DNA of 64,000 nucleotides. It comes from Podarcis erhardii. Its lineage: Eukaryota. Every line of letters begins with the position of its first letter. The first letter of the stretch is position 1. Below are positions 28,211-64,000 of the stretch, piece after piece. Below the pieces are notes generated by a model. That model did not search any database and was not told the origin of the DNA. It was given only the letters and a program-made list of their open reading frames with translations. Both the position numbers and the translations under genes were made by a program. The DNA lies in assembly GCA_964252035.1 (NCBI GenBank), contig OZ176209.1; one strand, 5' to 3'.

Positions 28211-30672
28211 GACAAGAAATGAATGGTCAGGACTCCACAGAGATACATGAGATCTTTCATGCTCCAACAGGATGCCATCAAGGCCCATAGCCAAGGTAGA
28301 AGAAGATTTATTTGCATTTCGCCTAATGTCCCTGGTGGAAATAAAGTTAGCAGACTGGATCAGGTGACCAGTAGGCTTCCAACTGTGCAGGGTGAATGCT
28401 TCATTTTAAGGTAATCAAGTATTAAGTTTCAACCAATCAATATAAAGTGCCAATCCTACCCATGATCCAGAAGATCACAGAGTGCAGAATGATGTAAATC
28501 AAGAACTGAAATGGTTCGGTCATTATTGGATTTTACCTCAAAATGCAATATCACTATATCACTATAGTGTTAGAAAGGACCCTAGTGGTCACCAAGTCCA
28601 AGTCCCTGCAATGCAGTTACCTCAACTTGCAGTCTCCCATCCAATCTGAAACCAGACCAGACCTGGCTTAGCCTTTGCAAATGTGCTAGCAGTTTTACTG
28701 CTATACCACTATGTCTACTTTATCTGCAATTTTGGTAATCAAAATCTTTTAGATGCAGTTTCTTGTGGCTGTTGCTTTTGCCTGTAGGTTTTCAGCGTTG
28801 CCATCAATAAGGGCCTATATGCCTTTGCTAAGGACAAAGAAATGTTGAGCCTCACCCTTTCTTCATCCTTAAAGTAAATTTCTTCTGTAAGCTTCAGGGG
28901 GTATTTTTCTTTGTTCTTACTTAAACCATTTCTCCTCAAGGGAAAAAAAGTTGCACATATTGACCTTACATGATCAAGCCTTGGTGAGCCTTTGGTTCAT
29001 GTGATTTCCCCTCAGCCCACCTGTTCTCCTCTTCCGGCTACAAAGAGGCGAAAAGAAGCTGTTGCTTCTGTTTTTAACTAACCACTGTTTAGCATTATAT
29101 CCAGTCCCAAACAAACTGTGCTTAACTTTGAGTATGGTTTACTAAGACAGCCCAATTTCTGGCTTGTTTCAATAAACCATTGATAAGATTAATCACAACT
29201 TTGAGTTCAGACTAAACTTACTGCTGTCCTGCAGTAAATTGTAATGGAGATGATGTCTGATGTTTTCCTTGGAAGGAGGAATAGGGAAGGGGGACCAAGG
29301 TGCATTCTATGTTAAACCATGGTTTAGCGTTACAACTGAATGAGGCAACTGTGGGCTTGTAGAGCTCTTAACATTTTACCTGAATTTACACCTCTCAGGC
29401 AATTTACAGGTAAGAAAAAAGTCCACTGTCAAACAAATTATCAGCTTCATTTTATGCTTGGAAAGGTGTTGAATCGTTGGATGAGCCTTTATTATTAATA
29501 TTAAATATTCATGTTGATCTGAGTACTCTTTTTATCTTGTAGCATATACTGACACATTATAAAGAGTGTCTTCTCTTAATTTTGACTTTGGTCTTGTGAG
29601 CCACCAAGCCAAATGCAGCCCATCAGCTACATATGGTCGTCTGCCCAGGGTACTGATAATCCTTCTGCTTTTGCGGCCTGCCTGGGACTGCAAAACAAAA
29701 ACGGGAATTGCCAAAGACCTGGAAGACCCTAGTCCAGGTGGGCTGCATATGGCTGGATAGGGTTGCAGGTTGTGTCCTAAAATGTTTGCAATGAACTTTA
29801 ATTTGGGCTGAAAGGGGTTAACTAGTCCAAAATCCAGAATTGGTCATACTCAGAATAGGCCCATTAAAATCAGTAGGCCTAAGTCAGTAATGTTCATTTA
29901 TTTCAGTGGGTCTACTCTGAGTATGGCTAACAGGGATACAACCCATTATTCATTCTGTTTAAATAATTCACATTGACTTTTTTTAGAAGTCCATGGTGTG
30001 TGTTAATGGGACATGCAGTAAACATAGGATCCATTGTGATACATTACCTAACTGAGCATTTGTCCAGATCGTTGTTCACTAAACTAAAGAGTGGCATAGC
30101 AAGACATAATGTGAGCAGCTTGTGGAACGACCAGACACCTGCTTTGCATTCACCACAAACTCAGTAACACTTTCATAGTAAGCCCGGGAGAGTTATGATA
30201 TTTCCTTTAGTTATATGCTTTCATATCTCTTAGGCAACCTACCATAACATTATTCTAGAGATGACTAACCCATTTGGTTTAGTATATTCTGTAACATAAT
30301 ATACATTGTTTTTGTTATGATAAGATTGTAGGATGGTCTATTTAAAAAAATAATAATAATTCTGGCATTGGCTCCTCAAAGTTGTGTTCTGGTCTTGTGT
30401 TTATCCAAATTCCAATCAGGCTTTATATTTGCCATAATTGCTTTGAGATCCCTCTATAGAGGAAGAGTAATTCTTACCAGCCAGCCATCACTAACCTGAA
30501 ATTTCCATACCTAGGTTGTTAGCTTTTTTAGCATCACATTGTTTTTAGTTCATCCGCATCAACTGCCTCATGTCACCCTATTGTAAGTGTGGTTTATTCT
30601 ACATAAAATTCTGTCAGTTAAAGTATTAAATTTGCAATCACACTTTTCTTTTGAGCATTCTGTGCTGTGTTC

Positions 30673-30884
30673 NNNNNNNNNNNNNNNNNNNNNNNNNNNN
30701 NNNNNNNNNNNNNNNNNNNNNNNNNNNNNNNNNNNNNNNNNNNNNNNNNNNNNNNNNNNNNNNNNNNNNNNNNNNNNNNNNNNNNNNNNNNNNNNNNNNN
30801 NNNNNNNNNNNNNNNNNNNNNNNNNNNNNNNNNNNNNNNNNNNNNNNNNNNNNNNNNNNNNNNNNNNNNNNNNNNNNNNNNNNN
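30673..30884. other. Assembly gap (212 N)
   Basis: run of N. Confidence 1.
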
Positions 30885-30972
30885 CTTATTTTTAAGAACT
30901 CTTTTTTAAAAATTTATGTATTTCTTTTATTGATAATCAACCATTGTGTGGTTCAGTGCTTAAAGAGCTTAC

Positions 30973-31145
30973 NNNNNNNNNNNNNNNNNNNNNNNNNNNN
31001 NNNNNNNNNNNNNNNNNNNNNNNNNNNNNNNNNNNNNNNNNNNNNNNNNNNNNNNNNNNNNNNNNNNNNNNNNNNNNNNNNNNNNNNNNNNNNNNNNNNN
31101 NNNNNNNNNNNNNNNNNNNNNNNNNNNNNNNNNNNNNNNNNNNNN
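30973..31145. other. Assembly gap (173 N)
   Basis: run of N. Confidence 1.
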
Positions 31146-31269: not shown

Positions 31270-31353
31270 GCAGAAGAAAGGCATGGCAACATTGAAGAGC
31301 GCATGAGGCACTTGGAGGCCCAACTGGAGGAGAAGAACCAGGAGCTTCAAAGA
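31270..31353 (+). CDS. PPFIA2: PPFIA2 exon (84 nt, phase 0-0): [28 protein letters not shown]
   Basis: tatatag|GCA ... AGA|gtatgt. Confidence 0.95.
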
Positions 31354-33875: not shown

Positions 33876-35228
33876 CGGGTACTACAGCACCTTCCTTCAC
33901 CCCTGCCCACACCTCCCTTTGTGTGCCCCTTGCACCCCCTCTATATCTGATATGGAGTTCCCTCAACCCTCCAAATCAGATTGCAGGGGGTGCAATGGAA
34001 GGAGAAGGTGGAGAAGTTTCATTGTGTGAGCAATTAAACTGGACAGTGCTATTGTTCACACATCCAAGTGAAGATATGAGAGAGCTACATGCCGCACAGC
34101 ATCAACATTTAGCCATACACTAGAGAACCCGCACCTCTGTAGGCTGCAATCCTTGGCACATTTCTCTGGGAGTGAGCCCCATTGAATGCAACTTACTTCC
34201 AAATTGGGCTGTACACTTCAAGTAGTGTTCATTGGCCTGCTGATAATATTTATGGACCCTAGTGCTGGCATGAATTGCCCCCATAAAATATGTGGGCTGG
34301 ATACATTTGGTTGAATGAAAGACTTTCCTCCAAACTGCCACATTCTTATGCAAATACCTCCTTCCCCACTCTAGAGATGCATTTTGATTGCTCTGCTTCC
34401 ATAGAATGCTCAAGTCTGGGTGGTCAATGGCCAGAAACTTATTGAGGACATGAGTCTTGAGCTTTCAGCCCCACATCTACCCAATCCTGACAGTCATATT
34501 AAAAATAGCATCAAAATTGCCCTTTGCAAGTCAACACAGCTTAACCCATGTACCATTGATTTAATGAACCAGTCAAATTCATTACAAACATTTATAACAA
34601 ATGCCATTTTTCTAATTCTTTACCAACCTACAGCCAGTAGATAACATAAATTCAACCAATCATATTTAAGTAAGCAGAAAGTAATTTTGCTAGGTATCAG
34701 ATTAAATAGAAATAGAAGGAGTGGAATGGGAAAGAATTGTGGCTGAGCCCTGAGTCTAGGGGCAAAATAACTGTTAATACGTGATATCGGAACCAAACAT
34801 GAAGGGAATACATTGTAGACAAATACATTTTTTAATTTGGCTGCCATTTGTTCCTAAAAAGAGAATTTCCAGAAGGAATGGATGGGATTAGACTTCCTGA
34901 CTATGACTCATGAGCTCCTTGTTGCTTCATTTGTTTATTTTAATAATTTGTTGGCCACATTCTGTTCCAAAGAATGGTACCCGAAGCAGTGTGCTTCCTT
35001 CCAATTATGCTTATCCCCATATTTTGTCTATACTTGTTGTCAGGAAGAGACTGAATCTTTTTTTGTGTGGGGGGGGGAGAATGTCATATTTAGCATTTAT
35101 GGAATGTAAATAGCTGTTGCCTATATGTATTTTGAGCAGTTGAAAAATATGTTTCCAGAATTTGTTTTTGATTTACTGCATTTATAGCTTCTCTCCCCCC
35201 CCCCCGAAGAGCTTAAGACATGCTTGCC

Positions 35229-43292: not shown

Positions 43293-43322
43293 CCGAGTGA
43301 TCTCAGGAAGCACCGGAGAAAG
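43293..43322 (+). CDS. PPFIA2: PPFIA2 30-nt mini-exon (phase 0-0): PSDLRKHRRK
   Basis: long pyrimidine tract, caactccag|CCG ... AAG|gtatgc; supplies the liprin PSDLRKHRRK motif expected between the flanking exons. Confidence 0.92.
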
Positions 43323-47737: not shown

Positions 47738-48705
47738 GATCAAGCAATATCTACCTTCTGAATCGGAATGCAATGCAATGGCAGGATTAATGGCTCAAAA
47801 CCTTGAAATCCAGTTTACATTTATGCTATTCCAGACTTTCTGTATCACCAGCTATACCTCTGTTCAGCAGCAAATGAGCAAAAGTCAAAAGACAAGTCTT
47901 AGCTCACCTTCCCATGGTCGAGAGCTCTCTTACAAGCCAGAGTTCATACACGAGAGCACTCTTCAGGTGCTCTGATGCCATGTACGAAAATAGCAAGGCT
48001 AACATGCCCCTCCCTATAGCCCTACCCCTTTGCATGATCACAATGCATGACATCAAAACACCTGAAGAGAGATTAGATCTACCTGCAGCAGATACAAGCC
48101 CAGCTATAGAGCAGGGAATCTTTCTCAGAAGCCTATCACCACCACCACCACCACCACCTCCAGTCAGTGTCATGGCTGTTGGTTGCTTTTTGGAACTTAT
48201 AGGACTCATTCTCTGGATACGCTCAGAAATACTGCTCTGCATCTATGCCTAGTAGGAGGAAAATACCTTTCACTAGGTTTTCACCCTGTTCCTGCTCAGA
48301 ATAGAAATTTCTCAGGTAAGATTTTTAAAAATCCCATTTTGGGTTGAAAACAATGTTGTCACAACTCAGATTTGTTTGGTTCTTCTCAACACATATTTCT
48401 CTGAACTTTCCAGCCAAAAAATATATTAATAGGGCTTTGATGAATTATATCTCCTTTCTGTCACTTTTTGTTAGATTGAATCATCTTGATCAGCATTAGT
48501 GAGACATGAAAATTAGCCATTGTGCTGTTCTAAATATTATTATGATGCAGGAAAGAAGCCATCAGAACCTGATTAATGTTTCCAATTATGAAGACACTCT
48601 TATTAGATTCCAGATAATTTGTTTGCACAGCTGCTTAGGAGGGGATGGGCACAGGACCTCATAAGGGCAATAATGTATTATCTATCTTTTGTGTGTATTT
48701 TATAG

Positions 48706-48860
48706 TAGCTTGCCTGCATCCTTGGAGCCAGAAAGCATTGGTCTTGGCAGTGTCAGTAGCAGCCAGGATTCCCTACACAAAGCTCCCAAGAAGAAAGGAA
48801 TCAAGTCTTCAATAGGACGTTTGTTCGGTAAAAAAGAGAAGGCTCGACTTGGACAGCTCA
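48706..48860 (+). CDS. PPFIA2: PPFIA2 exon (155 nt, phase 2-1): (S)[51 protein letters not shown](R)
   Basis: ttttatag|T ... CTCA|gtaagg; [18 protein letters not shown] liprin motif. Confidence 0.95.
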
Positions 48861-50351
48861 GTAAGGAATTAGTTGTACCAGGCTCGGGTCGCTGTTTTTC
48901 AGTATTTTTTTTTTAATGGTTTTGGCTTCTTTTTCAGTTTCATTTTGCTTTTCCAAACATTCATTTCTCTTCTAAACTGGTGGGATCTTTTCCACATAAT
49001 TCTGTTATACCATAACTAGTATTGACTGTCACATCGTTCACTGTGTTTTTCTAAATGAGCAGGGGGGATAGGATGAGATTCCTTTACTTAATTCTGCTGC
49101 CTTTACAGAATTACGAAAGTGTAACTTTGCTAACACTTACACAGTTTAAAAAACCTTGACAGCAAACATATGAATCTGTTGACTTGGCTAAAAGGCCCCT
49201 TTCCACAACCACCATCACCGTCCTTTTTCAGTTTTGTTTAGCATCCAACTTGACAGAAGACTTGGCTAGCAGAAAACTCAAAGTGGCATTGGTTCCCATG
49301 CTTTTGCTCCTATTATGAATGTAGTTGCTTTTAGCCTTCGTTTGCTTGCCATGAATCCCCTCCTGGATTCTTTTCCAGTCTTCATAGCACAAGGCTCCTA
49401 TCTGTTTTGATCTTATACTCAGATAGATTATAAGACACAAAAGTATCCATACACTGGCAGAGCTATGCTAACTGCCTGCCTATGCCACTGTGGTTTGCAG
49501 AGCCACTAGGACATTTGTAGCCAGCCACTCACAGCAGCAAAAGGGGAGGCAGGCAACTCTGGCCCCAATCCTGCTGCTGCTGACTTAGTAAAAGTGACTA
49601 ATAGTTGTAATTCTATTCATTTCAATAAAACTACACCTTTTAGTGGCTTTGCTAAGTTGCCATTTGTAAAAACAAAACAAAGATTTAGGTAACTGTCATT
49701 TGAAACAGATGGCCGGAACATATTGGTGATTATGGATCCTGTTAGAATATGAAGAATTTCCACAGTGTCTTACAGTTCGTATTTAATATCTTCATATCAT
49801 TGTCCATTTACGTTATTCAGGGGCAACACTTTAGGTAAGTTTTATCCTGAATCATTTCATTCAAATAAAATTGGAAACTTCCACTTCTCAGTTTCCACAT
49901 CCCTATTGACAAGAAAGAGCAAGGAAACAAATATTTAACCTAAATATTTAGGATATTTAGTGAGCAGCCCCAGTTTACTCTGGGGCAAGCAAATAGTGAA
50001 TACAGCCTGCCTAACCCCCATATTTTTAACTTTTCATGTAAAATATTGTACATTCTGAAATATAGTGTATATAAACAAAAAATAAATAGGTTGATAATTA
50101 GCTTAGTGCAGAATGGTCACTTTTCTCATTATTAGTAACATTCTAGTTCAGACCGTCCTTTCATCTAGCATTGGGGGAAATGAGGTGATTTGGTTTTTTT
50201 TAATATGGTACATTCAATATATTTCACAATCAATTTAATGATGAGCCCTTTGACACAAACTAGATGTTCCCATCTGCACAGACTAAAAGCTTAATATCTG
50301 TTCCATGGCTTATTCATTGTCAGTTAAATTAATCAAGATCCATTTTATTGA

Positions 50352-50387
50352 TATTGGCATACTAAATACTATTGGCATACTAAATAC
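50352..50387. repeat. Perfect 18-nt tandem duplication (tattggcatactaaatac x2)
   Basis: read directly. Confidence 0.85.
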
Positions 50388-50746: not shown

Positions 50747-51006
50747 CAGTCATACCTTGGGATACAGAAACTTCAGGTTGCATTTTTTCGGGTTGTGGAC
50801 CGCCGAAACCTGGAAGTACCAGAATGGGTTACTTCCAGGTTTCGGCGGTCACACATGCGCAGAAGCGCTAAATCACACTTTGCGCATGCGCAGACGCACC
50901 AAATTGCAACCCACGCGTGCGCAGGCGTGCTGCTGTGGGTTTCGGATGCTGTGGGTTGTGAACGTGCCTCCCGCACGGATCACGTTCGCAACCCAAACGT
51001 CCACTG
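50747..51006. mobile_element. Tigger-like MITE, family B
   Basis: TA-cagtcatacc...cgtccactg-TA; core shared with 3400-3627. Confidence 0.7.
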
Positions 51007-51275: not shown

Positions 51276-53418
51276 ATGGGAGAGAGCCATTGCCTTCAAG
51301 TCCTTCTTCCTGGAGGCATCTACAGTACTTGCTGGTCTAGATCAACCTCTAATCTAATGCCTTCTGATAGGGATTTGTGCTCTTGTATATGGCAGCAATT
51401 ATAACATTGGAAACAGTGTCATTTGGTTTCTTTTTGTCCTGTGTCACAATAGGACTTCTTTTTTCTTTTCTTTTTGAATGAGAAAAGTTGCTTCAACCAT
51501 GCTGCATCTTCTCCGGTCCATGATCATTATCAAAGATTTTCTTTCAGAAAACCATGGTGGTCCTTTCTGTAGTCTTGGTTTCCATAGCTTTCCACTTCTG
51601 ATGATTAGCTAGGATCAAGTCACCTAATGTGTTAAAGAGATCTAGTTTAGTGTTGTTGTTTTCTAATTCTTCGACCCAAAAAACCTGACTCAACGATACA
51701 TATTTAAGATTGAGAGTAGGGAACTCTTTCTCTCTTTTTTCCCTTCTTTATCCTTTGAACTTGCTGTCCTTTTGTCGTCTCATTGACTCTCTCTGCAGTC
51801 TTCCAGCATGCTTTTGAAACATCAACTTTTGTTTGTGTTCTCTATTGTTGGATCTGTGATGTCTTTTCTTAAATTCAAATAATGTATCACATTGGTTGGC
51901 AAGAACAGGGTCCCTCCACCCCATCTAATTGGAGATGGAGAAAACATGTGAAAATGTTTAAGAATATGACTTGTGTAACCACCCAGTTACCTTGTGGTAT
52001 TGCTTTTAATTTAAAATAGCACAATGGTACACTATAGCTCATGCCAATGTTTCAAGCTCAAAGTCGCTTAAATATGATCCATAACAGAATGCATGTCCTA
52101 ACTGTGCTTGGTCAGATGATGGTACAGCTGAACAAGAGGAGATTTACTGACTCTGATATACTATATCTTAGGCAGTGATCCTGCATGTACATCTTTCATC
52201 TGTCTGTGCAAACAGTCTATATTGCTGGTGGCATGCTCTGTGTGTTTGTGTGTGTCTCCAGACTCGAAGGTGTCTGAAAGAGGGATGTGTATAATCATCT
52301 TACTCCTGCCTCCAGTAAGCAAGTGCTTTTGTCTTGTTTCAAAAACGTGCAAAACCTGCATGACTAGAGGCAACAGCGAGCAGAAGAAAGGCTTAATGGG
52401 AACTGATACCTCTAAAAAAAACCCAACCCATTTTCAACCACCTTTAAAACTATTGGTTGTATTCATAAGTAAGGAGGTTGGAAGGCCACTCATGCAAAGG
52501 AACATTCCTGGCCCCAGTTCCTCACTACCGCACCCCACACAACCAATATTTGTTGGTATTTTAAGGTTGTATTTTGCTGCTTGGTATGGTTTTAACTCCA
52601 TTTTATAATTCTTTCCCATGCTGTTTTTTTTTTATTTTGTTGCTGTTGACTTTTGTGAGTTTGTTTTCTGTACATATTCTTTTCCCTTTTTGTGTGATTC
52701 CAAGAGAGATCAATAGCAACTGGGCATCTAATAAATGCATTAAATAAAAAATGAAGCCTCTTGGCAGCTGAGGAGTCCTCAAGAAAGGTTTTGGTAGGAT
52801 GTAGTGCCCCTAGAAGACACTTTTAAGAGGCCCAGGAGGCTGTATTAGGAAAAGGAGGAGTGTGGACAAGCCCTTCTCCATACATATATTCCACTCCCAT
52901 AACTTCTGGCTACAGCCCATTTTCTGTTTTCATTCTGTTTAGAGGCAGCTCTAGGGAAAAACCCAGCTAATTTCATACTTTCTCCAAAGCATTAGGAAAC
53001 TACAGTTTCCTACACACAGGGGACTCTGTTTTTATCCTGTAGTGCTATGCAGTCATCAGTACATAATGACTCGCCTCCATATTGAACAGTCCTGCAGTCA
53101 GCAGACATTTCCCATACCTCACAGGAAACCTTGAACAAGACCTTTAGTGACTGTATATTAATAATCTGCTGTTGAGGTACCTGTGGCTTTTGCTGCTTCT
53201 TTTTCTAAGTCGTTGAGACCATCCTACAAATGATTTCCTTGTTGTTAGTTCTTATATGTCCCAACGGATAGTGAGGAAGTAGCTTCTGGATTTAGGTATC
53301 TTGCTTTGTTTTCCACCCCAGAAGACAGACTTTAGAATTTCACAGACCAAATGCTAAACTAATAGAGCTGCTTGAAAAGAATGTCAATGGAGAAAATCTA
53401 TTTGCTGTTTTGACACAG

Positions 53419-53512
53419 GAGGTTACATGGAAACAGAAGCTGCAGCACAGGAATCTCTGGGATTAGGCAAACTGGGAACTCAGGCAGAGAAAGACCGAAG
53501 ACTAAAGAAAAA
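53419..53512 (+). CDS. PPFIA2: PPFIA2 exon (94 nt, phase 1-2): (R)GYMETEAAAQESLGLGKLGTQAEKDRRLKK(K)
   Basis: tgacacag|GA ... AA|gtaggt. Confidence 0.95.
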
Positions 53513-54824
53513 GTAGGTTGCTTATTCATGCTCCTTTTATCCTGTCATCCATCTGTAGTGCATTTCCTTGATCCTTTACTTATGCTCAGCATGGATTGCA
53601 CCTGCTTGGAATATCCAGTAGGTATTTGTTTTCTATTTAAATATATTTGATTAGCAACACTCAGTACAATTTACAAACATATAATTTATCAAAATAGTGC
53701 AATAGCTTGCAAAAATAAAACAAGTTTTATTGGCACTTAAAGCAGCATTAAAAAAAAAACCCTAAAGGATTGTGTCCATTTCTCTATGTGGATTTCAGTA
53801 AAGAAGGTCAAGAGGAAAGGCTGTTTGTATTTATGAGCAGCCTATTATAAAATGCAAATGTTCTCCTTTGACTCTATTTTCTCCTTAGGAGGGGGGCAAC
53901 CTAGAGTTTTGTGTATATGAATTATAGGATAATTATATGCTTTCACCCACTGCATTTACTTGGAAGTTAAATTCAGCAGCTGCTATGATTCAGGACACAT
54001 AGGCTTTGATAAACTGTAATTACTACTGCTTCTCAATACCTGCTATGCTCCGTTTGGAAACAGATTATTTAAAAAAAAAAAACAAAGGGGGGAAAAACTT
54101 ATAGGGGGAATAAGACTATTCAGTGTTTTGAAGCAGTGTTGTGAAGTTTTGCTGTTGCTTCTCATGGTATGACTTTGGAAATTTCCTTAAAGTTTTCTCA
54201 CTCAACTTACTTCTGCTGATCCTTTCCTCAAAAGTTTCCTGCTTAATATTGTCAGTTTCTTCATAGGTGTGTTCCAACATTTGACTCTTTGTTTGTAGAG
54301 TGCATATTAACCATGTTTTCTATGCCACGTATGACTGTGAGAAAATATATTTTCACCGTTCACTGTTCATTGTTCAACCTGGTTGTTCACCCTATGAAAA
54401 TCCTGATGCAGCAATCCAAAGCTACAATCAACAGAATTATTCTGCCAGTTTTATCTTTTCCATGCTATTTACTAGAATCCTTACCTGATTTCTTATCTGA
54501 GCTATGACTGTATAGAAGAAGCAGAGAACCAGACTGGAATTTGTATCATGCTGCCAAGCTAGCCATTAGATTTAGAAGAAAATATCAGATAAGAGGTTTC
54601 TGACTATAAATGGTATAAAATCATTACTGAGGATTTCAGGAATAACTTCTGGTTATAACTTCTGTAGTATTTTAAAATTTTATTTCTGGCTTCCCATTCC
54701 TAAATATTTGTAATGAATAGCACTTGAAATCCTTACCCCAGTTGCCTAGTAGAAAGCCCCATGGAATTCAGTAAGATTTACTTATGAGTAGGCATGGATA
54801 GGATTGCACTGATAACATCCGAAA

Positions 54825-55180
54825 GGGACACGGGTGGTGCTGTGGTCTAAACCACTAAGACTCCTCGGCTTGTTGATCAGAAGGTCGGCGGTTCAAATTC
54901 ACATGACGGTGAGCTCCTGTTGCTCTGTCCCAGCTAACTTAGCAATTCGAAAGCACACCAGTGCAAGTAGATAAATAGGTACCACTGCAAAGGGAAGGTT
55001 ACGCTCTGGTTTTTGTCATGGTGTTCCCTTGTGCCAGAAGCGGTTTAGTCATGCTGGCCACATGACCTGGAAAGATGTCTGTGGACAAATGCCAGCTCCT
55101 TCAGCCTGACAGCGAGATGAGCGCCACACCCCATAGTCACCTTTGACTGAACATAACCATCCAGGGGTCCTTTACCTTTA
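54825..55180 (+). mobile_element. Sauria SINE
   Basis: gggacacgggtggtgctgtggtctaaacc...ccaggggtcctttaccttta. Confidence 0.87.
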
Positions 55181-58025
55181 ACTCTACCCTACATTTTAAC
55201 ATCCTAGAAAAACTAACGTAATATTATTAGAATACCTGTATAACACATGATGATGGTGTAGTATGAAATCAGTCACTGTCGCCCATCATATGTATAAGCA
55301 ACAGAAGTAAACAAAAAATGGCTTTGGGGTTGGAATAGAAATCTTTGTTCATTAAAAGAGTCTAATAATTTATATAAAATTTTGCTAGAGACTTTAGTCC
55401 TGCCTTTCACCTTTGTCCTTTGTCTCATTCGTTGGTGGTTTGGTATTCTTTATGTTTGCTGGATTTCTTGTTTCTGGTAATTGCATCTTGTGGTTAGCCT
55501 CTGAAAAAGAAGCAGTAACATATAATTTGATGACCTCCTTCTGGTTACAGTGTGGCTTAGGAAAGCTCCAATGTCTATTTATTTAACAGAGCCTTGCCCA
55601 ACCCAGTGCCCTATAACTCCCATCAGCCCCAGCCAGCACTATACTCTGTTTAACACCATCCCTCATATAATAGGGCCCCTGCCCCAAATATGCTTACAAT
55701 CTAAAAGGGGACTAGGGGAATGGGAGCAGAGGTGAGCAGGGTAAGACTATATGATTACTTCAACTACTATCCTTTTGTTTAGTTGCAACTGGGGTTGGAG
55801 ATTGCTGGAGTTCTGCCTACTCCTTACTAGAAAGAACAATGGTGAATGTATGAAAGGGAACAAGCAAGGATTATGCAGTTTAATGCAAGTCAGAGAGGCA
55901 AGGAATTAGTTTTTATTGGTCCTACCACCAATTTCCTTTTCAGCCTTAAATGTTTCCTATCTTCCTCTATTAAATCTGTAATTTCATGTTGCCTGTAGGG
56001 TGTTTTGCTTTCTTTAAGTTAAATGTTTAACTATCCTACAATGAATTTGCAAATTTTAGTGATAGGATACATGTTTTAGAGACCAGTATTTTCACACCGG
56101 TGTCTTTATTTGCTTGTTCATTTTGATTCCCCTTTATTCCATCTGTTTGCTTTACAAAATCAATCAAGCAGCTTTTAAAGAAATCTCGGGTGAATAGTAT
56201 CTGGCCCATTGACTTCTCATGTCTTGATTTTGATTGTCAACTGAATACAGTCTGCTGCCAAAAATGTCTGCCGCACAAGAAATTCCTGGGGCTCTGAATT
56301 TTGCAGACATTGTGTTTGAGACTTGCCCATGGAATCTTTCCCTGCTACTTATCTGTGTATAGATCTTAGCCCTGTTCAAATGGCACTTTTGGGTCAGAGA
56401 TGGTAAAAAAGCAAGAGGGGTTAATTCACCTAATCTTCAGACCCACACCAGTTGTTTGTGCAGGAGCTACTCTTTGTATTTTTTCAGGGTACAGATCACA
56501 TGGAAAGATTGTAGGTTCATGCAGTTTGTAGACACATAATCTCTGGACAATAGATTGACTTAATTCATAAAGATTGCCAATAGGGCCAACAGGCATCATT
56601 TTAAACGTGTCCCAGCCAAATTGCTGTCTGCACAGCACCCTGGCTGTTTAGATATCAAGGCAACTGGCCTTCTACTAGATATTACACGGGAGATCATTCT
56701 GCTAAGACAGGAAACCTCACAGGGTACCAGTAAATTTAAAGCGCCCATGTACCACAGTTATATGATGGGCCAGACTTTCAAACTAATTGTTTGAAAGATG
56801 GTTTTTATTACAGTAGAGCTGTAGGAAGTGGTACCTTCTCAGAAGTAGTGGGTCCAACCTTGTTGCTTCAACAGAAGGTTTATAACTTAATACATATTTT
56901 TGTATGCTCACTAAAAATGCAAATGACATGCAGTGTCTCGGACAAATGTGTGTCTAGCAGCTATTAAAATGTGAACATGTTTCCCATTTCAGTGGTTTCA
57001 TGGTTCATAAATCTAATACATCTATAGTAGTTTTCACATGCTAACTCACTGAGGTCTACATGGGCTTAATTTGTCAAAAATGCAATCAAAAGCAAATAGT
57101 TTAAAATGCGGAATATATATACCGTATATTGCTCAGATTGAAACTGTACCCATCTAAGTCACATCTTCAATTACTACCGTCGGCTGTGCATGTTTGTAAA
57201 ATAAGTTTTACAAATGCAAAGTGAAAGCTTAATTGTGATTTTACAATGTCATTTGGATGATGATGTAATTGGAATAATAATGTAATTTGAAGGGATGTTT
57301 AGTTATCCTATACAAATGCTATACTCTCTATATATATGTATCAAGAAGCATCTCCAATAATCATCTAAATTTGGAGCATTTAAATTGCATGTTAGTTTGG
57401 GATGCAATTGGCCCATATCCAGAACTGAAAATCTTTTTCTGTGTCTTTCAAATAAGTCTCTACTTTCCTTTGCTTTCTTGCCCCATACCACCTGTCTCAA
57501 CAAAGTGCATTAATATTAGCTCAGCAAGGCTGGGAATATGTTCCCTGCCTAGCTAGTCTCGGAAAGAATTAAGTATATATGCTGTCTATTTTTGATTACT
57601 CCATAGATTTCAGGCTTTGGAAAGCTACAAGGTTAGAATCAACTGTTTGAACTTTCACACTATCATCCCTGCCCCATCACCATCCTCCTTGGTATTGGCT
57701 GACCATATTCCAATGCATTACTAGTGCATTGTGATAAACACTGTTAATTAACAAGCCATTCAAGAACTCTAAACTGCAGTGGGTATAAGCTGTGACCAGG
57801 GTTGAAAGAAGCCTGGTTTTCTCTCTTCTCAGCAATTCTTAAGGATAAGCCACCCCACAAATTATCAGAGTCCTCTATATAATGCAACTACCTCTTCCCT
57901 CGAGTCACTGACAAAATTACCACACTGACACTGACAAATTCCTTCTGCCGCTTACCAAATTTGTCACTTGCAGCATTTCAGCCTCTGGCAAGGATGCCTT
58001 TGCACCTGAATTTAGTGCTACCTTA

Positions 58026-58192
58026 CAGATAGGTAGCCGTGTTGGTCTGCCATGGTCAAAACAAAATAAAAAAATTCCTTCCAGTAGCACCTTAAAGACC
58101 AACTGAGTTAGTTCTAGGTATGAGCTTTCGTGTGCATGCACACTTCTTCAGATTTCGTGTGCATGCACACTTCTTCACACTTCTTCAGATGA
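58026..58192 (-). mobile_element. Penelope-like short insertion with hammerhead core (58118-58153) and partial tandem duplication
   Basis: 14-bp TSD ttagtgctacctta (58012-25, 58193-206); same terminus as 17355 and 37522. Confidence 0.8.
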
Positions 58193-58760
58193 TTAGTGCT
58201 ACCTTATTATCACCAGTAACAAAGAGCGATAATTTGAGGGGGGAGAACTGACAGCTTTGTTTGCATTTGCTCAGTATCAAAGGGGATCTGAATGCACAAG
58301 TTCTCCCTAATTCTTAATGCTTATTTTCAAACGGTACAGTATATGGCTCCAAGCTGGGTGTAAGGACACAGGCAAGCCAACAAACCGTATTATGCTCCCA
58401 GATGGAGAATCTTATTGGAGTATCTCCCGAAGTGCTTTCTTGCTGCTGCAAGGAGTATCATGAGCTACAGAGAGAGGGTGTGACAGCTCTGTACGGCCAT
58501 TCAGCCACACCTTGGATTAGGAAAAGGTCATTTAGGAGGCAGAGAAAGGGATGACAGACTGTTTGGTACTTTTATCCAGCTGCGGGATGATGCACATACC
58601 AACCCATGGGAAATCTACTGGTGCAGCAGGCACTATGAAGATCAACATTTCTGCAAAAGCACCCACTTAGTGGGATGAAGTAATCAGTGCTGGTTTGATA
58701 GGGGGAATCAGTCTTTCTGCTTTTTGTGTAGGTGTGGAAAGTCAGTGAAGATGGTCTTAC

Positions 58761-58890
58761 ATAAGAACTTCAGAAGAGCCTTGTAGATCAGACCAACGGC
58801 CCATCTCATCCAGCATCCTGTTCTCACAATGGTCAACAAGATGCCTGTGGGAGACCCGCAAGCAGGAACTGAGCACAAGAGCCCTCTCTT
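58761..58890 (-). mobile_element. LINE (CR1/L2 clade) 3' end fragment
   Basis: ataagaacttcagaagagcc...cccatctcatccagcatcctgttctcaca resembles a common squamate LINE tail; recognised from memory. Confidence 0.5.
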
Positions 58891-59235
58891 GACTGCACTT
58901 AGACCCCACCTTTCAGAGAAGTCTACCTGGTTCTCCCCTTGCTCTGTTTTATCCTCACATTAACTCTGTGAGGTTGAGCTGAGGCTGATAATTAGCACCT
59001 TGGCCAGTGCAGCCACTAGTTGCTCCTGTTCTGTAGCTTGGTGTTCTTTCATTCATTCATTTAAAAGTGTCCTGAAATCCATATATTACAATATGTGGAT
59101 GACTTCTGGTATTCTGTATCATTGGATTTCCCATCATCAAGCAGTGCTGAGGAACCTTAGGCCTGGGAAGCTGAATTAGGTTTTCCAGGCCTCAGAACTC
59201 TCCTCAGGCCACACACACCCCCACTGGCCTGAGTT

Positions 59236-59612
59236 GGGAGTGGGTGGCGCTGTAGTCTAAACCATGGAGCCTTTTGGGTTTGCCAATCGGAAGGTCAGCG
59301 GTTTGAATCCCCACTATGGGGTGAGCTCCCGTTGCTTTGTCCCAGCTCCTGCCAACCTAGCAGTTCGAAAGCACACCAGTGCAAGTAGATAAATAGGTAC
59401 CACTGTGGTGGGAAGGTAAACGGCATTTCCATGCACTCTGACTTCTGTCACAGTGTTCTGTTGCACCAAAAGTGGTTTAGGCATGCTGGACACATGACCT
59501 GGAAAAGCTGTCTGTGGACAAACGCCAGCTCCCTCAGCCTGAAGCAAGATTAGCACCACACCTCTGAGTTGCCTTTGAATGGACTTAGCTATCCAGGGGT
59601 CCTTTACCTTTA
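59236..59612 (+). mobile_element. Sauria SINE
   Basis: full-length family match. Confidence 0.86.
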
Positions 59613-61308
59613 ACACCTTGAGGTTTTTTGCCTGGCTGGAATGTGCCTTTGGAACTCTTAATAATGTCTTTTGCTTGTTTGAATGGAGAATAGCAGGGGA
59701 GGGGGAGGTCTCTCTGTGTGTACAAACTTCCTTACTGTTTAGAGGTAAAATTTTAAAAGCACCGAAACCATAATTTTAAAAGCACTGAAAATAAGTGCTG
59801 GAAGAATTCAGTCCTGCATCACTCTAGGGGCAAAATACTGAAGCCCTTACAGGACTATCCCATTACCAAGCTTTCTTCCACACTAGCCATTTCATCTGAA
59901 ATGGACGCCATTTGTTCTCTCAGCTTTTTCCTGAATAATCCAAATGAGACTGTTGCTAATGTGCTGTATTCTGGTGTTTTTAGCCATCCTTCTCCTGCTT
60001 TTCTACACTTTTGATTTGTGGCTCTCTTTCTTTAAACTGTTAAAATGCAACTGCAGCCCAGCCCAGCGAAGTGCTTTTGAGGCATCCCAGGGCTAATGTT
60101 CCCATTAATTTTCCTCCTAGTGCCCTTTTTAAAAAGTGACTTCCGCTTCTCAGCTTCTGCCACCTTAATTAGTTTCTTCCTATTCTCTGCTGGCATTTTT
60201 GAATTGGTTCATAACTAGGCAGTTCGTATATAGGGGGAGCCCTTAAAGTCCTCTTTTCCTCCTTGTAGCCATAGCAATTGCTTATTAGTTAACCCTGCTC
60301 TTTCATTTTACAGTTGGAATTTCTTTGAGTTGATTTCTTAAATAAGTTTAAACCGACATTTTATTTTAAATTTTCTTATGCAATGGAATGGAAGGGGAAA
60401 GAAAAATCATAATGCCTCAAATTACCTTTCTTGGAGATGGCAGGTGTATTATTTATATACTTGTTTAGATTCATTTCTGATCCTGCGGCTCCTCTTTTTA
60501 GAGACAAACATTCTTAAAACTGGCAATATTATACAATGCAGTATTAGTTTCTGAATAACATACAGACTTTAATAAATCGTAATCGTGCTTAATTTAGGTG
60601 CTTTTGCAATCTGGTCCAGTTTTAGGTATCTACTTAATGCTGATAACATGCATTATATATATACATATATATAGTTTTATTTAGGTGGATAAAATATTAA
60701 GCATTGGGTTGGCAGTTATAGTGTTGCTGCTTTCAGAAACTTTTGTGACTGATTACACCTGTCTTGTGGTATGTAAAGTTGTCGTGTCTTGTTTGCAGTA
60801 TGTATCATGCCGTGAGTGTTTGTCTCCTGTTTTCCAACTCAGGAATTCCGTGATAGATTGGCACATTGTCCTACTCATGTGATATGTGTAAACATTACAT
60901 TCAGTTCACATGGGACATAGCTTGGGTGCAAGTTATTGGTCCTCCAGGGCGGTTTGCAGGGTGCCCATTCTTGTGAAGACAGTCCCAGTGTTCTTTTCCT
61001 CTGTGTTTTCAGTCAAAGTTCTGACACAAGGGGAGAGAGTTGGCTTGACCCAAGCAGATGTCCATGTTCAGAAAGGGCAGGCATGGCAATGAAAGTTTTG
61101 TTTTCCATTTCATGGCAAACTCTGCTTGACATAGTTTTTTTAAAAAGGGGACATGGTTGACAACAGAAAAAATATATATCGGCAGATCGCTTAAGATTGC
61201 ACAGGAGCAAACAACATACACAAGACTTGTTAGGAGCAAACAACAGTACAGCTCAGTTCCTAATAATATTTCCATATGCACTAGACACTGAAAGCATATT
61301 GAAAGCAT

Positions 61309-61440
61309 GCAGCCCTTCCCCCTGAATCTTGGGAACTGTCGTTTGTTAAGGGTGCAATGAATTGTTACTTTTTGGTGGGTAAACTACAGCTTTCAGGATT
61401 CTTTGTTCGGTGGGGGGATGTGCTATAAATGCATGCTGTT
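61309..61440. mobile_element. Short palindromic MITE remnant
   Basis: gaatcttgggaactgtcgttt / aaactacagctttcaggattc imperfect inverted repeat. Confidence 0.5.
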
Positions 61441-63628
61441 AACACAGTAGGTGTAACCTTCAGACCTGGCCTTAGATTTGAAAGTAGAAAAAAAAATCCC
61501 ATCAGTCTTTAGCAAATGTATTGTTACAAATTGTACACTAGTTGTTTCATGGGGCGGGGGATTAATTCTGTCCCAATATATAAACATGTACAACTACTTA
61601 GCTTCAGTTTATAGATCTGTAAAGGCAGTAGATCTTGACCCTTCCAGATCACACTGAAGAGATTGCCGATGAGAGGGGAAAAGCAATCCCTAGGCTGGCC
61701 TCCTTCCCAAAATGGAACTAGGATTGGTGGCAGCTGAATGTATTGATCTCAGGAATAGGAGCTTCTCCGTGCCAAGCTATTGGGTGTAGGAAATTCTAAC
61801 TACAGCATTTCCTGTCTGCGTGTAAAGATCTATTTCCCAAATTGATCCATCCTTTGTTATCATCAGGGCCTTTTTAATTTAGTTGAGTGTTTAATTATAT
61901 TAGTTTGGCTTGCTCATCTTTAACTAAAAATAATAAGTTTGCTCATTGTCATATACACAATATTGCCTCTAATGAGCCTAGTAATTAAGTGCAATTTAAA
62001 ACAAAACAAAAAACTGAATTAATTGCTTTCCATCTATTTTTTTCTGATTCTTATTGCTAGAAAAAAAACCCCATTAATTTAGCCACTAAGGGTGTATGCT
62101 TTTGTTTAGCCCTTCGGAATACTTAATTATTATCTAACTCTTAATTATTTATAATTGCCCATTATTGACTAAATCTATGTTTGCCTCTTCTTTTTGTGTC
62201 AGGACCCATAAGAAATCATTATATATTAATATATCTCTGAGCTGACGCACAAACTTCCGCCTCCCTCCACAAATAATTTTTTCTTATATATAGTTGTTGC
62301 AACGCCATACCTACGCTCTCCGGAAAAGAGAAAGGACAATATTCAGTGATTTTAGCAAAGGCAAAGGTAATTCTTTTAGATTAGGTAGTTGGTTTTTTTA
62401 CCAAAGCAGTGTGAGAAGGGTCAGATTTTAGGATCTTTGCTACTCAGCTAATAGTAAACCTTCAGTCCCTTGCAGATGCCCTAGCAGAAGATAAATAAGA
62501 GATCTGTTCTGGCAAATGGGGCACTGCCCCACCAATCTCGGGTTGCCCTCAGCCAGCTCCCACCTGCCTGCCATCTTGAGGCAGTCATGGGTGGCTCTGC
62601 CTGCCTTCCATTCTGGCTCCCCCTACTGCTGGTCTGTCTCCCTGCCATCTGCGCCACCAGGCCCAGTGGAAATGAATCAGCCCTGTTGAAGCATAAACAT
62701 TATGAACCACCTCCCAGCTCAAGCCATTGCATCTATCTCTACGGACCAGTTCGCTCAGTCACAATCTTTCTTCATATACAACACAGTGTCTCCAGGGATG
62801 CACTCATATGGAGAGCATAAAATATGACGTGGGTCCATTTTATTCACACAGTGTGACCTTGCATTGGTGATTTCCCCCTGAAACAAACCACCGGTACACA
62901 ATGGGGAACAGGATCAGAACCATGGAGAAGAGATGTAAGCCCTTGCTCCCATAGCAGCCCCAAGCAGAATTAGGCCCTCCTCCCTTGTGCCTGCTCTTCT
63001 CAGTGGGACCTGCGAAGTATGCTGCCAATTGTGGCTGCATGAAATCTCCATTAGGAAGTTGCTTCTGTATTTATGGGAAGCCTGGATCAGACATCCCAGT
63101 TTACCCCATCCTAGATTGTACACCAGTTTGTTCATTCTTCAGGGGAAAGCCTATTTAGATGAGGGTATGAATGGCTCCTAGGTAAGGAACTGTATCATTA
63201 ATGGATGTGGATAAATTATAAGGAAAATTGTTATAATGGTTCAGGGAGTTGATGTTGCAAATCTGATGAACTGTAAGGAAGGCAAATGTATGTTTTTTCT
63301 TACGTGTTGACTGAGGCTAGTTCTGTTGTGATTGTAATCCATTTTGTATGTTCTACATTCAAGTGCCTTTAATTCAAGGTTAAGCTTGAATAATTTGCAT
63401 TTCTTTATCAGGGAAATTAGTGCTATCTAAATGTATTTACTCTGTAGAGGGTTATCTATTTAATTTAGCTAAAGCAAGAGAGATCGGTTTTAATTTTAAA
63501 AAATCATACTTCTATGCTGCTTCTTTAATTTTTTATTCTATCATATGATTTCTTTTATGGATTGACATATATACATTAATATTTGTGTGCTTTTCTTTTC
63601 CATCCATCTCTCTTCATCTCATGAAAAG

Positions 63629-63637
63629 CACATCTGG
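63629..63637 (+). CDS. PPFIA2: Putative 9-nt PPFIA2 microexon CACATCTGG (phase 2-2; converts K to NTSG)
   Basis: 144 nt free of AG (63483-63626), then aaag|CACATCTGG|gtaagt; phase matches the upstream exon ending in AA. Confidence 0.72.
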
Positions 63638-64000
63638 GTAAGTTAAACCACAATGGTTGCTGATCATATTCATTTTCAGCACCATATTTGGATTTCTTCT
63701 TTTATTTCCTCTTATTATATTTTTTAATTTCTATATAACCACTTTAATTTGCAGATCTATGTGGAGAGTTGAACCAAAATCAAACTTTAAAATATTCTAA
63801 ACTTGGGCAACATTGGAGACCTTTTCAAGGTCTACTCCTGTTTGTTCTCAACTTGTGGATATATGAATATATTTTCATATGAACTGAGTGAAATTCTAGA
63901 TGAGCTGAAATAAATGACAAAAAAACTTGTGCTCTACCTCTGTGGTAAACTGTTTCACTGGTATTTCACTCATTCATTTGTTCATTCACTTGTTCTATAT

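What the first reader, a model, noticed from the sequence alone, without database searches (positions are those of the whole stretch)
63483..63685. Hidden 9-nt microexon just before the SAM region (K to NTSG), in a neural-splicing-type context
Seen: no AG for 144 nt (63483-63626), a long pyrimidine tract, then aaag|CACATCTGG|gtaagt with a perfect donor. The last traced exon ends in phase 2 (AAA AA|), so inclusion gives AAC ACA TCT GG, i.e. KKNTSG, in frame with no stop. This assumes the next exon starts with G, as KHELLEE requires. YCAY motifs cluster upstream (ccatccatctctcttcatctcat, 63600-63622) and downstream (tcat..tcat..ccat, 63663-63685). Known: 3n microexons with long AG-exclusion zones are typical neural microexons, and YCAY clusters are NOVA sites. 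I recall a K-to-NTSG liprin-alpha isoform, but this is unverified memory. Inference: a regulated neuronal isoform that short-exon-blind annotation would miss. Alternative reading: ATG AAA AGC ACA TCT GG| (63621) as an alternative first coding exon giving a SAM-only protein.
Basis: partly seen in the sequence, partly recalled or inferred. Interest (0 to 1): 0.75.

Follow-up and report, generated by a model that had tools for sequence, protein, structure and literature searches.

The report
Conserved nine-base liprin-alpha-2 microexon
The nine bases are a genuine, very old alternative mini-exon of the synaptic scaffold gene PPFIA2 (liprin-alpha-2) that replaces one lysine with Asn-Thr-Ser-Gly just before the SAM domains. 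It is conserved with its flanking intron from gar to mammals and is already in public gene models, so it is real but not new.

Summary
An AG sits at 63627-28, CACATCTGG at 63629-37 and gtaagt at 63638-43, after a 144-nt AG-free zone, the longest N-free one in the window. The upstream exon (53419-53512) ends in phase 2 and is liprin-alpha-2.

The reading is supported. The same K-to-NTSG change at the same junction is annotated in Lacerta agilis (isoform X14), python, chimpanzee, a monkey, colugo, sloth and naked mole-rat. Birds, alligator and a turtle have NISG, and a caecilian has NTLG.

Genomic DNA of turtle, finch, colugo and gar carries the exon inside a roughly 130-nt conserved block. Lizard versus colugo is 89% identical there, higher than any coding exon compared. 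Gar differs only by two synonymous changes.

A mouse catalogue lists a 9-nt Ppfia2 cassette exon that differs between neuron classes, probably this one.

Not shown: expression in this lizard (two RNA runs had no reads on the gene) and which splicing factors control it.

Two conserved hairpins flank the exon, and one buries the acceptor. They are suggestive but unproven.

Verdict: a real, conserved, already-known microexon. The scan had not noted it before on other DNA.

The parts
53419..53512 (+). Upstream constitutive PPFIA2 exon (...GKLGTQAEKDRRLKK + AA), ending in phase 2
   Evidence: PDB 3TAC/3TAD liprin-alpha-2 constructs start GKLGTQAEKDRRLKK; tblastn with P0014. It is 91% identical to turtle and 83% to colugo.
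63483..63626 (+). AG-exclusion zone upstream of the acceptor
   Evidence: Long AG-free zones are also present in turtle (122 nt), finch (114), colugo (89) and gar (68).
63549..63685 (+). Conserved block around the microexon (lizard versus colugo 89% over 137 nt; lizard versus turtle 63531-63720 at 87%)
   Evidence: It is the only conserved non-coding-size block in the 10-kb intron.
63574..63580 (+). Candidate distal branch point CATTAAT (A at 63579, position -50), invariant as CATTAA[TC] in five species
   Evidence: Alignment A3. Its role as a branch point is inferred from the yUnAy consensus, not tested.
63585..63595 (+). GU-rich/UGC element (TGC at 63588-90, position -41), which is also the 5' arm of hairpin 1
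   Evidence: A TGC at -40 to -46 is present in all five species.
63591..63622 (+). Polypyrimidine tract carrying the YCAY cluster and CU-rich (PTB-like) motifs; it forms the loop of hairpin 1
   Evidence: It is 100% identical between lizard and turtle.
63623..63633 (+). 3' arm of hairpin 1, covering the acceptor AG (63627-28) and the first 5 nt of the exon
   Evidence: MFE, z = -2.4; RNAalifold finds the same stem. Only GC-to-GU changes are seen and there is no covariation.
63629..63637 (+). 9-nt cassette microexon CACATCTGG. With the flanking phases it reads AAC ACA TCT GGn, so K is replaced by N-T-S-G.
63638..63643 (+). Consensus donor GTAAGT, invariant in five species
63653..63685 (+). Hairpin 2: 63653-63663 pairs with 63676-63685 (10 bp, one bulge). 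The arms are conserved and the 12-nt loop varies.
   Evidence: Gar has five changed pairs that all still pair, one of them compensatory. The result is not significant with five sequences (96 of 500 shuffles).

Best explanation
Positions 63629-63637 are the lizard orthologue of an ancient alternatively spliced 9-nt cassette microexon of PPFIA2 (liprin-alpha-2). When it is spliced between the exon ending at 53512 and the first SAM-region exon (beyond the window), the junction lysine of ...DRRLKK-K-HELLEE... becomes N-T-S-G. This adds three residues at the boundary between a basic patch and the helix that leads into SAM1.

Shown here: the sequence anatomy, the orthology and coding constraint, and deep conservation of the flanking intron.

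Inferred: inclusion is regulated in neurons through the conserved intronic block. That block holds a distal branch point near -50, a UGC/GU element at -41, a pyrimidine tract with a YCAY cluster, a strong donor, and possibly two hairpins. The inserted Ser, which lies in a K-x-x-S context and is kept in NTSG and NISG forms, may tune SAM123-mediated interactions or add a phosphorylation site.
For: (1) Gene identity. The upstream exon matches liprin-alpha-2. The window carries PPFIA2 residues about 216-910.

(2) Same insertion in public proteins. NTSG occurs in chimpanzee (P0005, P0147), Lacerta agilis X14, Python, Galeopterus, Choloepus, Cercocebus and Heterocephalus. NISG occurs in five birds, Alligator and Platysternon. 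NTLG occurs in a caecilian.

(3) Chance estimate. Only 48 of 262,144 nine-mers encode N-T-S-G in this phase, and the window has 4 AG-N9-GTRAGT sites, so the chance is below 1e-3 (my arithmetic).

(4) Genomic orthologues. They are turtle L001:78547, colugo L002:38437, finch L003:5187 and gar L004:12410. The 47 nt upstream are identical between lizard and turtle. The lizard-colugo block is 89% identical, against 80-89% for the coding exons.

(5) Coding constraint. The gar exon TACATCAGG differs at two positions, both synonymous.

(6) Shared architecture. AG-free zones of 68-144 nt, a TGC at -40 to -46 and 3-5 upstream YCAY are present in all five species.

(7) Mouse. A 9-nt Ppfia2 cassette exon has PSI 0.04 versus 0.40 between neuron classes (PMC7821500 supplement). 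The only recurrent 3-residue cassette among 127 mammalian PPFIA2 models is this one.
Against: There is no transcript evidence from this species. Two raw RNA runs gave 0 reads on the upstream exon, and the two contig runs were unspliced and DNA-like.

Most models (80 of 104; 125 of 126) have the plain K form, so inclusion is probably minor or tissue-restricted.

The identity of the mouse 9-nt event with this exon is inferred, not verified.

The nearest UGC is at -41, whereas nSR100-dependent microexons are reported to have UGC within the first several nucleotides upstream (PMC4387716). SRRM4 dependence is therefore uncertain.

The functional effect on the protein is pure inference.
Confidence: 0.92

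Rival explanations
1. Alternative first coding exon. Transcription would start in the intron and translation at ATG 63621 (ATG AAA AGC ACA TCT GG), giving a SAM-only liprin-alpha-2 that begins MKSTSG-HELLEE.
For: A 299-aa Phyllostomus discolor model (P0154, KAF6121167.1) starts MKSTSGHELLEE. The ATG is conserved and in frame in lizard, turtle, finch and colugo. In lizard there is an in-frame stop 25 codons upstream with no intervening in-frame ATG.
Against: This is a single automated model. In gar five extra A's between the ATG and the exon put the ATG out of frame, yet the exon still encodes NTSG in the cassette frame. The conserved block has acceptor architecture (AG-free zone, pyrimidine tract, branch-point-like motif), not promoter features. 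The TATA-like string in lizard and turtle is not conserved in colugo. An ORF caller would pick this ATG on any partial or unspliced cDNA.
Confidence: 0.05
2. The conserved block is primarily a non-splicing element, such as an intronic enhancer or structured RNA. Exon-like use would then be incidental or an annotation artefact propagated by homology.
For: The flanks are more conserved than the coding exons. Two stable hairpins are predicted.
Against: Both gar differences in the 9 nt are synonymous, and the splice dinucleotides and GTAAGT are invariant. Independent pipelines include the exon: RefSeq Gnomon in many taxa, the chimpanzee assembly annotation and a turtle project. A mouse RNA-seq catalogue reports a 9-nt cassette in the gene.
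Confidence: 0.02
3. Chance pseudo-exon: an AG-N9-GTAAGT match with no function.
For: Eleven AG-(3n)-GTRAGT patterns occur on the + strand of the window.
Against: Everything under the best explanation argues against it, in particular identity of the peptide and the flanks across more than 300 million years.
Confidence: 0.01

Closest known systems
PPFIA2 'K to NTSG/NISG' isoforms in public gene models (e.g. Lacerta agilis liprin-alpha-2 isoform X14; Pan troglodytes PPFIA2 isoforms 26/27, PNI59417.1/PNI59418.1; Geospiza fortis X1/X3; Platysternon TFK11288.1)
   Same: Same gene, same exon junction (after ...DRRLKK, before HELLEE), same phase and same 9-nt length. The peptide is identical (NTSG) or differs by one residue (NISG). 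The flanking intron is homologous in the three tetrapod loci and the gar locus that were fetched.
   Different: Nothing of substance; this is the orthologue. Whether this particular lizard's own annotation lists it could not be checked.
Mouse Ppfia2 9-nt cassette microexon chr10:106882736-106882744 (MicroExonator, PMC7821500, supplementary file 8)
   Same: Same gene and same length. It is a cassette type, with different inclusion between neuron classes (PSI 0.04 versus 0.40). The only recurrent 3-residue cassette in 127 mammalian PPFIA2 models is the NTSG exon.
   Different: Identity is inferred, because no mouse DNA was available to confirm the nine bases.
nSR100/SRRM4- (and SRRM3-) dependent neural microexon programme (PMC4387716 lists Ppfia2 among genes with nSR100-regulated microexons)
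   Same: The exon is a 3n microexon of 27 nt or less in a synaptic scaffold gene. Its intronic flanks are ultra-conserved, its donor is strong, and it lies next to an interaction domain.
   Different: The nearest upstream UGC is at -41, not within the first few nucleotides. The paper gives no coordinates, so the regulated Ppfia2 exon may be a different one, for example the 30-nt exon at 43293-43322.
NOVA-regulated exons with intronic YCAY clusters
   Same: Four YCAY lie within 24 nt upstream, conserved in five species. Further YCAY lie downstream.
   Different: No CLIP or knockout evidence exists here. The densest cluster abuts the acceptor, a position associated with repression rather than activation (my recall of the NOVA RNA map). 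The downstream YCAY lie in the loop and 3' arm of hairpin 2 and are only partly conserved.
Shorter and longer versions at the same junction in fishes: teleost ppfia2 K to NG (3-nt exon) and teleost liprin-alpha-1 K to NPTTG/NPKTG/NPMTG (12-nt exon)
   Same: Same junction and phase, and an N...G frame produced by the same split codons. The halosaur locus keeps the upstream GTGTGCTTTTG...CCCATCATC element.
   Different: The exon length differs (3 or 12 nt). The 12-nt forms are in a paralogue. Homology of the liprin-alpha-1 exon was not tested at the DNA level.

Membership tests
Orthologue of the annotated PPFIA2 K-to-NTSG cassette exon | Lies in the intron between the exon ending ...DRRLKK(AA) and the exon starting (G)CAT GAA.. 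HELLEE, on the sense strand | tested here: met
   (turtle order: 62505-62594, 78547, 87155).
Orthologue of the annotated PPFIA2 K-to-NTSG cassette exon | 9 nt, phase 2 in and phase 2 out, encoding N-T/I-S-G | tested here: met
Orthologue of the annotated PPFIA2 K-to-NTSG cassette exon | Flanking intron homologous to that of species where the exon is annotated | tested here: met
   Turtle (model includes the exon) and colugo (model includes the exon).
Orthologue of the annotated PPFIA2 K-to-NTSG cassette exon | Spliced into mRNA in this species | tested here: inconclusive
   0 reads in two RNA runs and unspliced contigs in two others.
Neural microexon programme (SRRM4/SRRM3-dependent) | Length 3-27 nt and frame-preserving | tested here: met
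   9 nt and in frame.
Neural microexon programme (SRRM4/SRRM3-dependent) | High conservation of the exon and flanking introns | tested here: met
Neural microexon programme (SRRM4/SRRM3-dependent) | UGC motif close upstream of the acceptor | tested here: inconclusive
   A single TGC lies at -41 (-40 to -46 in five species). The paper describes enrichment in the first several nucleotides.
Neural microexon programme (SRRM4/SRRM3-dependent) | Neuron-enriched inclusion that falls on loss of SRRM4/SRRM3 | not testable with these tools
   Only indirect evidence is available: the mouse 9-nt Ppfia2 event differs between neuron classes, and Ppfia2 is named among nSR100 targets without coordinates.
NOVA target exon | Cluster of at least 3 YCAY within about 45 nt near the regulated exon | tested here: met
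   Four lie in 63600-63622, which is in the top 0.26% of 30-nt windows. They are conserved.
NOVA target exon | NOVA binding (CLIP) and NOVA-dependent inclusion | not testable with these tools
   No data were available.

The most novel reading that the evidence does not exclude
The two conserved hairpins may act as a structural switch for this microexon. Hairpin 1 (63585-95 with 63623-33) buries the acceptor AG and the first five exon bases, and it displays the YCAY/CU-rich tract as a 27-nt loop. Hairpin 2 (63653-63 with 63676-85) sits 15 nt past the donor. Binding of a neuronal factor to the 5' arm (UGUGUGC) or to the loop would open the acceptor. This would be a conserved RNA-structure mechanism for recognising an exon too short for exon definition.
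Probability: 0.2. Interest if true: 0.45.

Novelty: already known. Interest (0 to 1): 0.25.

Why it matters
That makes it a useful positive control.

Biologically the exon is an old, tightly constrained alternative form of a presynaptic active-zone scaffold, placed directly before the SAM123 module that binds CASK, liprin-beta and LAR-type phosphatases. The reviews I read (PMC8044993, PMC13311821) do not discuss it, so its function is open.

The five-species alignment gives a compact, testable map of the cis-elements: branch point, UGC/GU element, YCAY loop and two hairpins. It adds nothing categorically new.

Tried and rejected
(1) Read laying on 53300-53650 with two raw RNA runs and two contig runs. 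The RNA runs had no reads, so tissue or expression is unsuitable. The contigs read straight through both exon borders. This is no test of splicing, and the cap is now used.

Exons were searched singly, by reference.

(3) A word search with the K-form protein P0014 was saturated by 120 identical K-form hits and showed nothing. Re-querying with proteins that carry the insertion (P0005, P0206) solved this.

(4) An exact 23-mer scan of metagenome contigs found no hit. I did not use the second scan.

(5) The look-up of encoding contigs gave nothing usable for several proteins. The bat, two teleosts and the seahorse were not on record. The python and alligator gene ranges were too long.

(6) Zurner & Schoch 2009 and Irimia 2014 are not held.

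(7) A TATA-like string upstream of the ATG, considered as a promoter hint, is rejected because it is not conserved in colugo.

(8) Covariation tests of both hairpins are not significant with five sequences.

No human DNA contig was fetched or compared. Some protein clusters carry human names because the sequences are shared with apes, and these were used only as rows in a protein isoform survey.

Full report
**Observation**

- The upstream exon runs 53419-53512 and ends AAA AA| before gtaggt.
- In the next intron the last AG before the candidate acceptor is at 63481-82, which leaves 63483-63626 free of AG.
- This AG-to-AG gap of 146 is the third longest of 4245 in the window, and the two longer ones contain runs of N.
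- The acceptor AG is at 63627-28, the exon CACATCTGG at 63629-37 and the donor GTAAGT at 63638-43.
- The 35 nt before the purine spacer are 83% pyrimidine.
- Four YCAY lie in 63600-63622; 0.26% of 30-nt windows reach that count.
- The downstream YCAY count is ordinary.
- The pattern AG-N9-GTRAGT occurs four times on the + strand, so the pattern alone is weak evidence.

**Gene**

The upstream exon translates to GYMETEAAAQESLGLGKLGTQAEKDRRLKK. The crystallised liprin-alpha-2 SAM123 constructs 3TAC and 3TAD begin at GKLGTQAEKDRRLKK. tblastn with a full-length liprin-alpha-2 (P0014) places 14 exons, covering residues about 216-910, along the + strand of the window. At protein level the window is closest to lacertid lizards: Podarcis 99.2% and Lacerta 98.2%.

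**The predicted isoform exists**

A search of protein representatives with the 30-residue exon returned a chimpanzee fragment, 'PPFIA2 isoform 26, partial'. It reads ...AEKDRRLKKNTSGHELLEEARRKG.... That is exactly the K-to-NTSG change that inclusion of 63629-37 predicts.

A cluster look-up then turned up a turtle model with NISG at the same place. I used that turtle protein as the query so that insertion-bearing proteins would rank first. The results were:

| Insertion | Where found |
|---|---|
| NTSG | Lacerta agilis isoform X14, Python bivittatus, Galeopterus, Choloepus, Cercocebus, Heterocephalus |
| NISG | Five birds, Alligator sinensis |
| NTLG | A caecilian |
| NG | A teleost liprin-alpha-2 |
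| NPTTG / NPKTG / NPMTG | Teleost liprin-alpha-1 |
| Plain K | 80 models in the same list |

Only 48 of 262,144 nine-mers encode N-T-S-G in this phase. With four candidate sites in the window, a chance match has probability below 1e-3.

**DNA-level orthology**

Four genomic loci could be fetched: turtle L001, colugo L002, finch L003 and gar L004. Each carries the exon with AG and GTAAGT, at L001:78547, L002:38437, L003:5187 and L004:12410.

- **Lizard versus turtle.** In the 11 kb from 53000 to 64000, only two blocks align: the upstream coding exon and a 190-nt block around the microexon. The 47 nt before the exon are identical.
- **Lizard versus colugo.** The block 63549-63685 is 89% identical. 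That is more than any of the five coding exons compared, which are 80-89% identical and have at most 19 nt of conserved flank.
- **Gar.** The exon is TACATCAGG. Both differences from the lizard are synonymous, so it still encodes NTSG.
- **Turtle and birds.** They carry ACA to ATA (T to I). The finch assembly also has TCT to CCT.
- **All five species.** Each keeps a long AG-free zone (68-144 nt), a TGC at -40 to -46, and 3-5 YCAY in the last 60 nt.

The exon is therefore at least as old as bony vertebrates. It is under both coding and regulatory constraint.

**Regulation**

What is shown is limited.
- MicroExonator's supplement lists a mouse Ppfia2 cassette exon of exactly 9 nt (chr10:106882736-106882744). 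Its PSI is 0.04 versus 0.40 between two neuron classes.
- Among 127 mammalian PPFIA2 models, the only recurrent 3-residue cassette is the TSG insertion at this junction. The mouse event is therefore probably this exon, but I could not verify the bases.
- Quesnel-Vallieres et al. name Ppfia2 among genes with nSR100-regulated microexons, without coordinates.
[quoted passage not shown] Here the nearest UGC is at -41, so SRRM4 dependence is open.
- The YCAY cluster and the CU-rich tract are compatible with NOVA and PTBP binding. This is motif inference only.

**RNA structure**

Folding 63560-63700 gives two hairpins (z = -2.4). RNAalifold finds both on the five-species alignment.

- **Hairpin 1** pairs 63585-95 (GUGUGCUUUUC) with 63623-33 (GAAAAGCACAU). 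It covers the acceptor and five exon bases and loops out the pyrimidine/YCAY tract. Across species only GC-to-GU changes occur. Nineteen Watson-Crick stems of 10 bp or more with short loops occur in the 64 kb, so one lying on this acceptor by chance has a probability of roughly 1-2%.
- **Hairpin 2** pairs 63653-63 with 63676-85. In gar five pairs differ and all still pair, one by a double change. The loop varies. With five sequences this is not significant (96 of 500 shuffles).

I treat both hairpins as hypotheses.

**The alternative start reading**

A bat model (P0154) begins MKSTSGHELLEE, and the ATG at 63621 is in frame in all four amniotes. In gar five extra A's shift the ATG out of frame, while the cassette frame is preserved. 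The conserved block also looks like an acceptor region, not a promoter. I give this reading about 5%.

**Expression in this lizard**

This could not be tested. Two raw RNA runs of the same species label gave no reads on the upstream exon. Two contig runs were unspliced. No human contig was fetched.

**Verdict**

The feature is the orthologue of an already annotated, deeply conserved PPFIA2 microexon. Its novelty is low. The modest new content is the five-species map of cis-elements and the two candidate hairpins.

Noticed in passing
L005:17202-17204 (halosaur Aldrovandia affinis ppfia2 locus); related copy near L005:15850-15910: At the same junction the fish has ...catgactgtaag|TGG|gtaagt, an apparent 3-nt microexon giving K to NG. 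This matches the 'NG' isoform annotated in Anarrhichthys (P0263). The upstream GTGTGCTTTTG...CCCATCATC element is kept. The whole element is duplicated 1.3 kb upstream with TGA in place of TGG.
   Followed up: partly
window 48490-48703: The 214 nt of intron upstream of the exon 48704-48859 are conserved with turtle (81% over 448 nt including the exon), far more flank than at the other exons. Mammalian isoforms vary at this exon's start (SSLSVSLEPE present or absent), so this may be another regulated acceptor. The turtle assembly carries the block twice (L001:52398-52838 and 53881-54321).
   Followed up: no
window 30360-30672 and 30913-30972: Two non-exonic blocks are conserved with turtle (76-85%). 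They lie directly beside the N runs 30673-30884 and 30973-31145, just upstream of the exon 31270-31353.
   Followed up: no
window 43293-43322: A 30-nt exon (PSDLRKHRRK) is absent from 6 of 127 mammalian PPFIA2 models. It is a second small alternative exon in the window and a candidate for the nSR100-regulated Ppfia2 event in the literature.
   Followed up: no
window 34554-34807, 50256-50374, 1263-1323: Further short non-exonic blocks align to the turtle locus (67-84% identity). Their function is unknown.
   Followed up: no
P0206 / L001 (Platysternon megacephalum TFK11288.1): The turtle protein named 'proline-rich protein 15-like protein' is in fact a partial liprin-alpha-2. Its C-terminus reads through into intron after ...VVAWLE.
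   Followed up: partly
window 50798-50850 and 58130-58170: Perfect inverted repeats of 21 bp and 14 bp with short loops. The first lies in a stretch whose ORFs recur elsewhere in the window, so it is likely a transposon.
   Followed up: no
runs X1-X14: Runs labelled 'RNA? (a guess)' hold 0.5-0.8 of the words of a stretch that is two-thirds intron. When laid, they read through both exon borders, so they behave like DNA (capture or low-coverage) libraries.
   Followed up: partly
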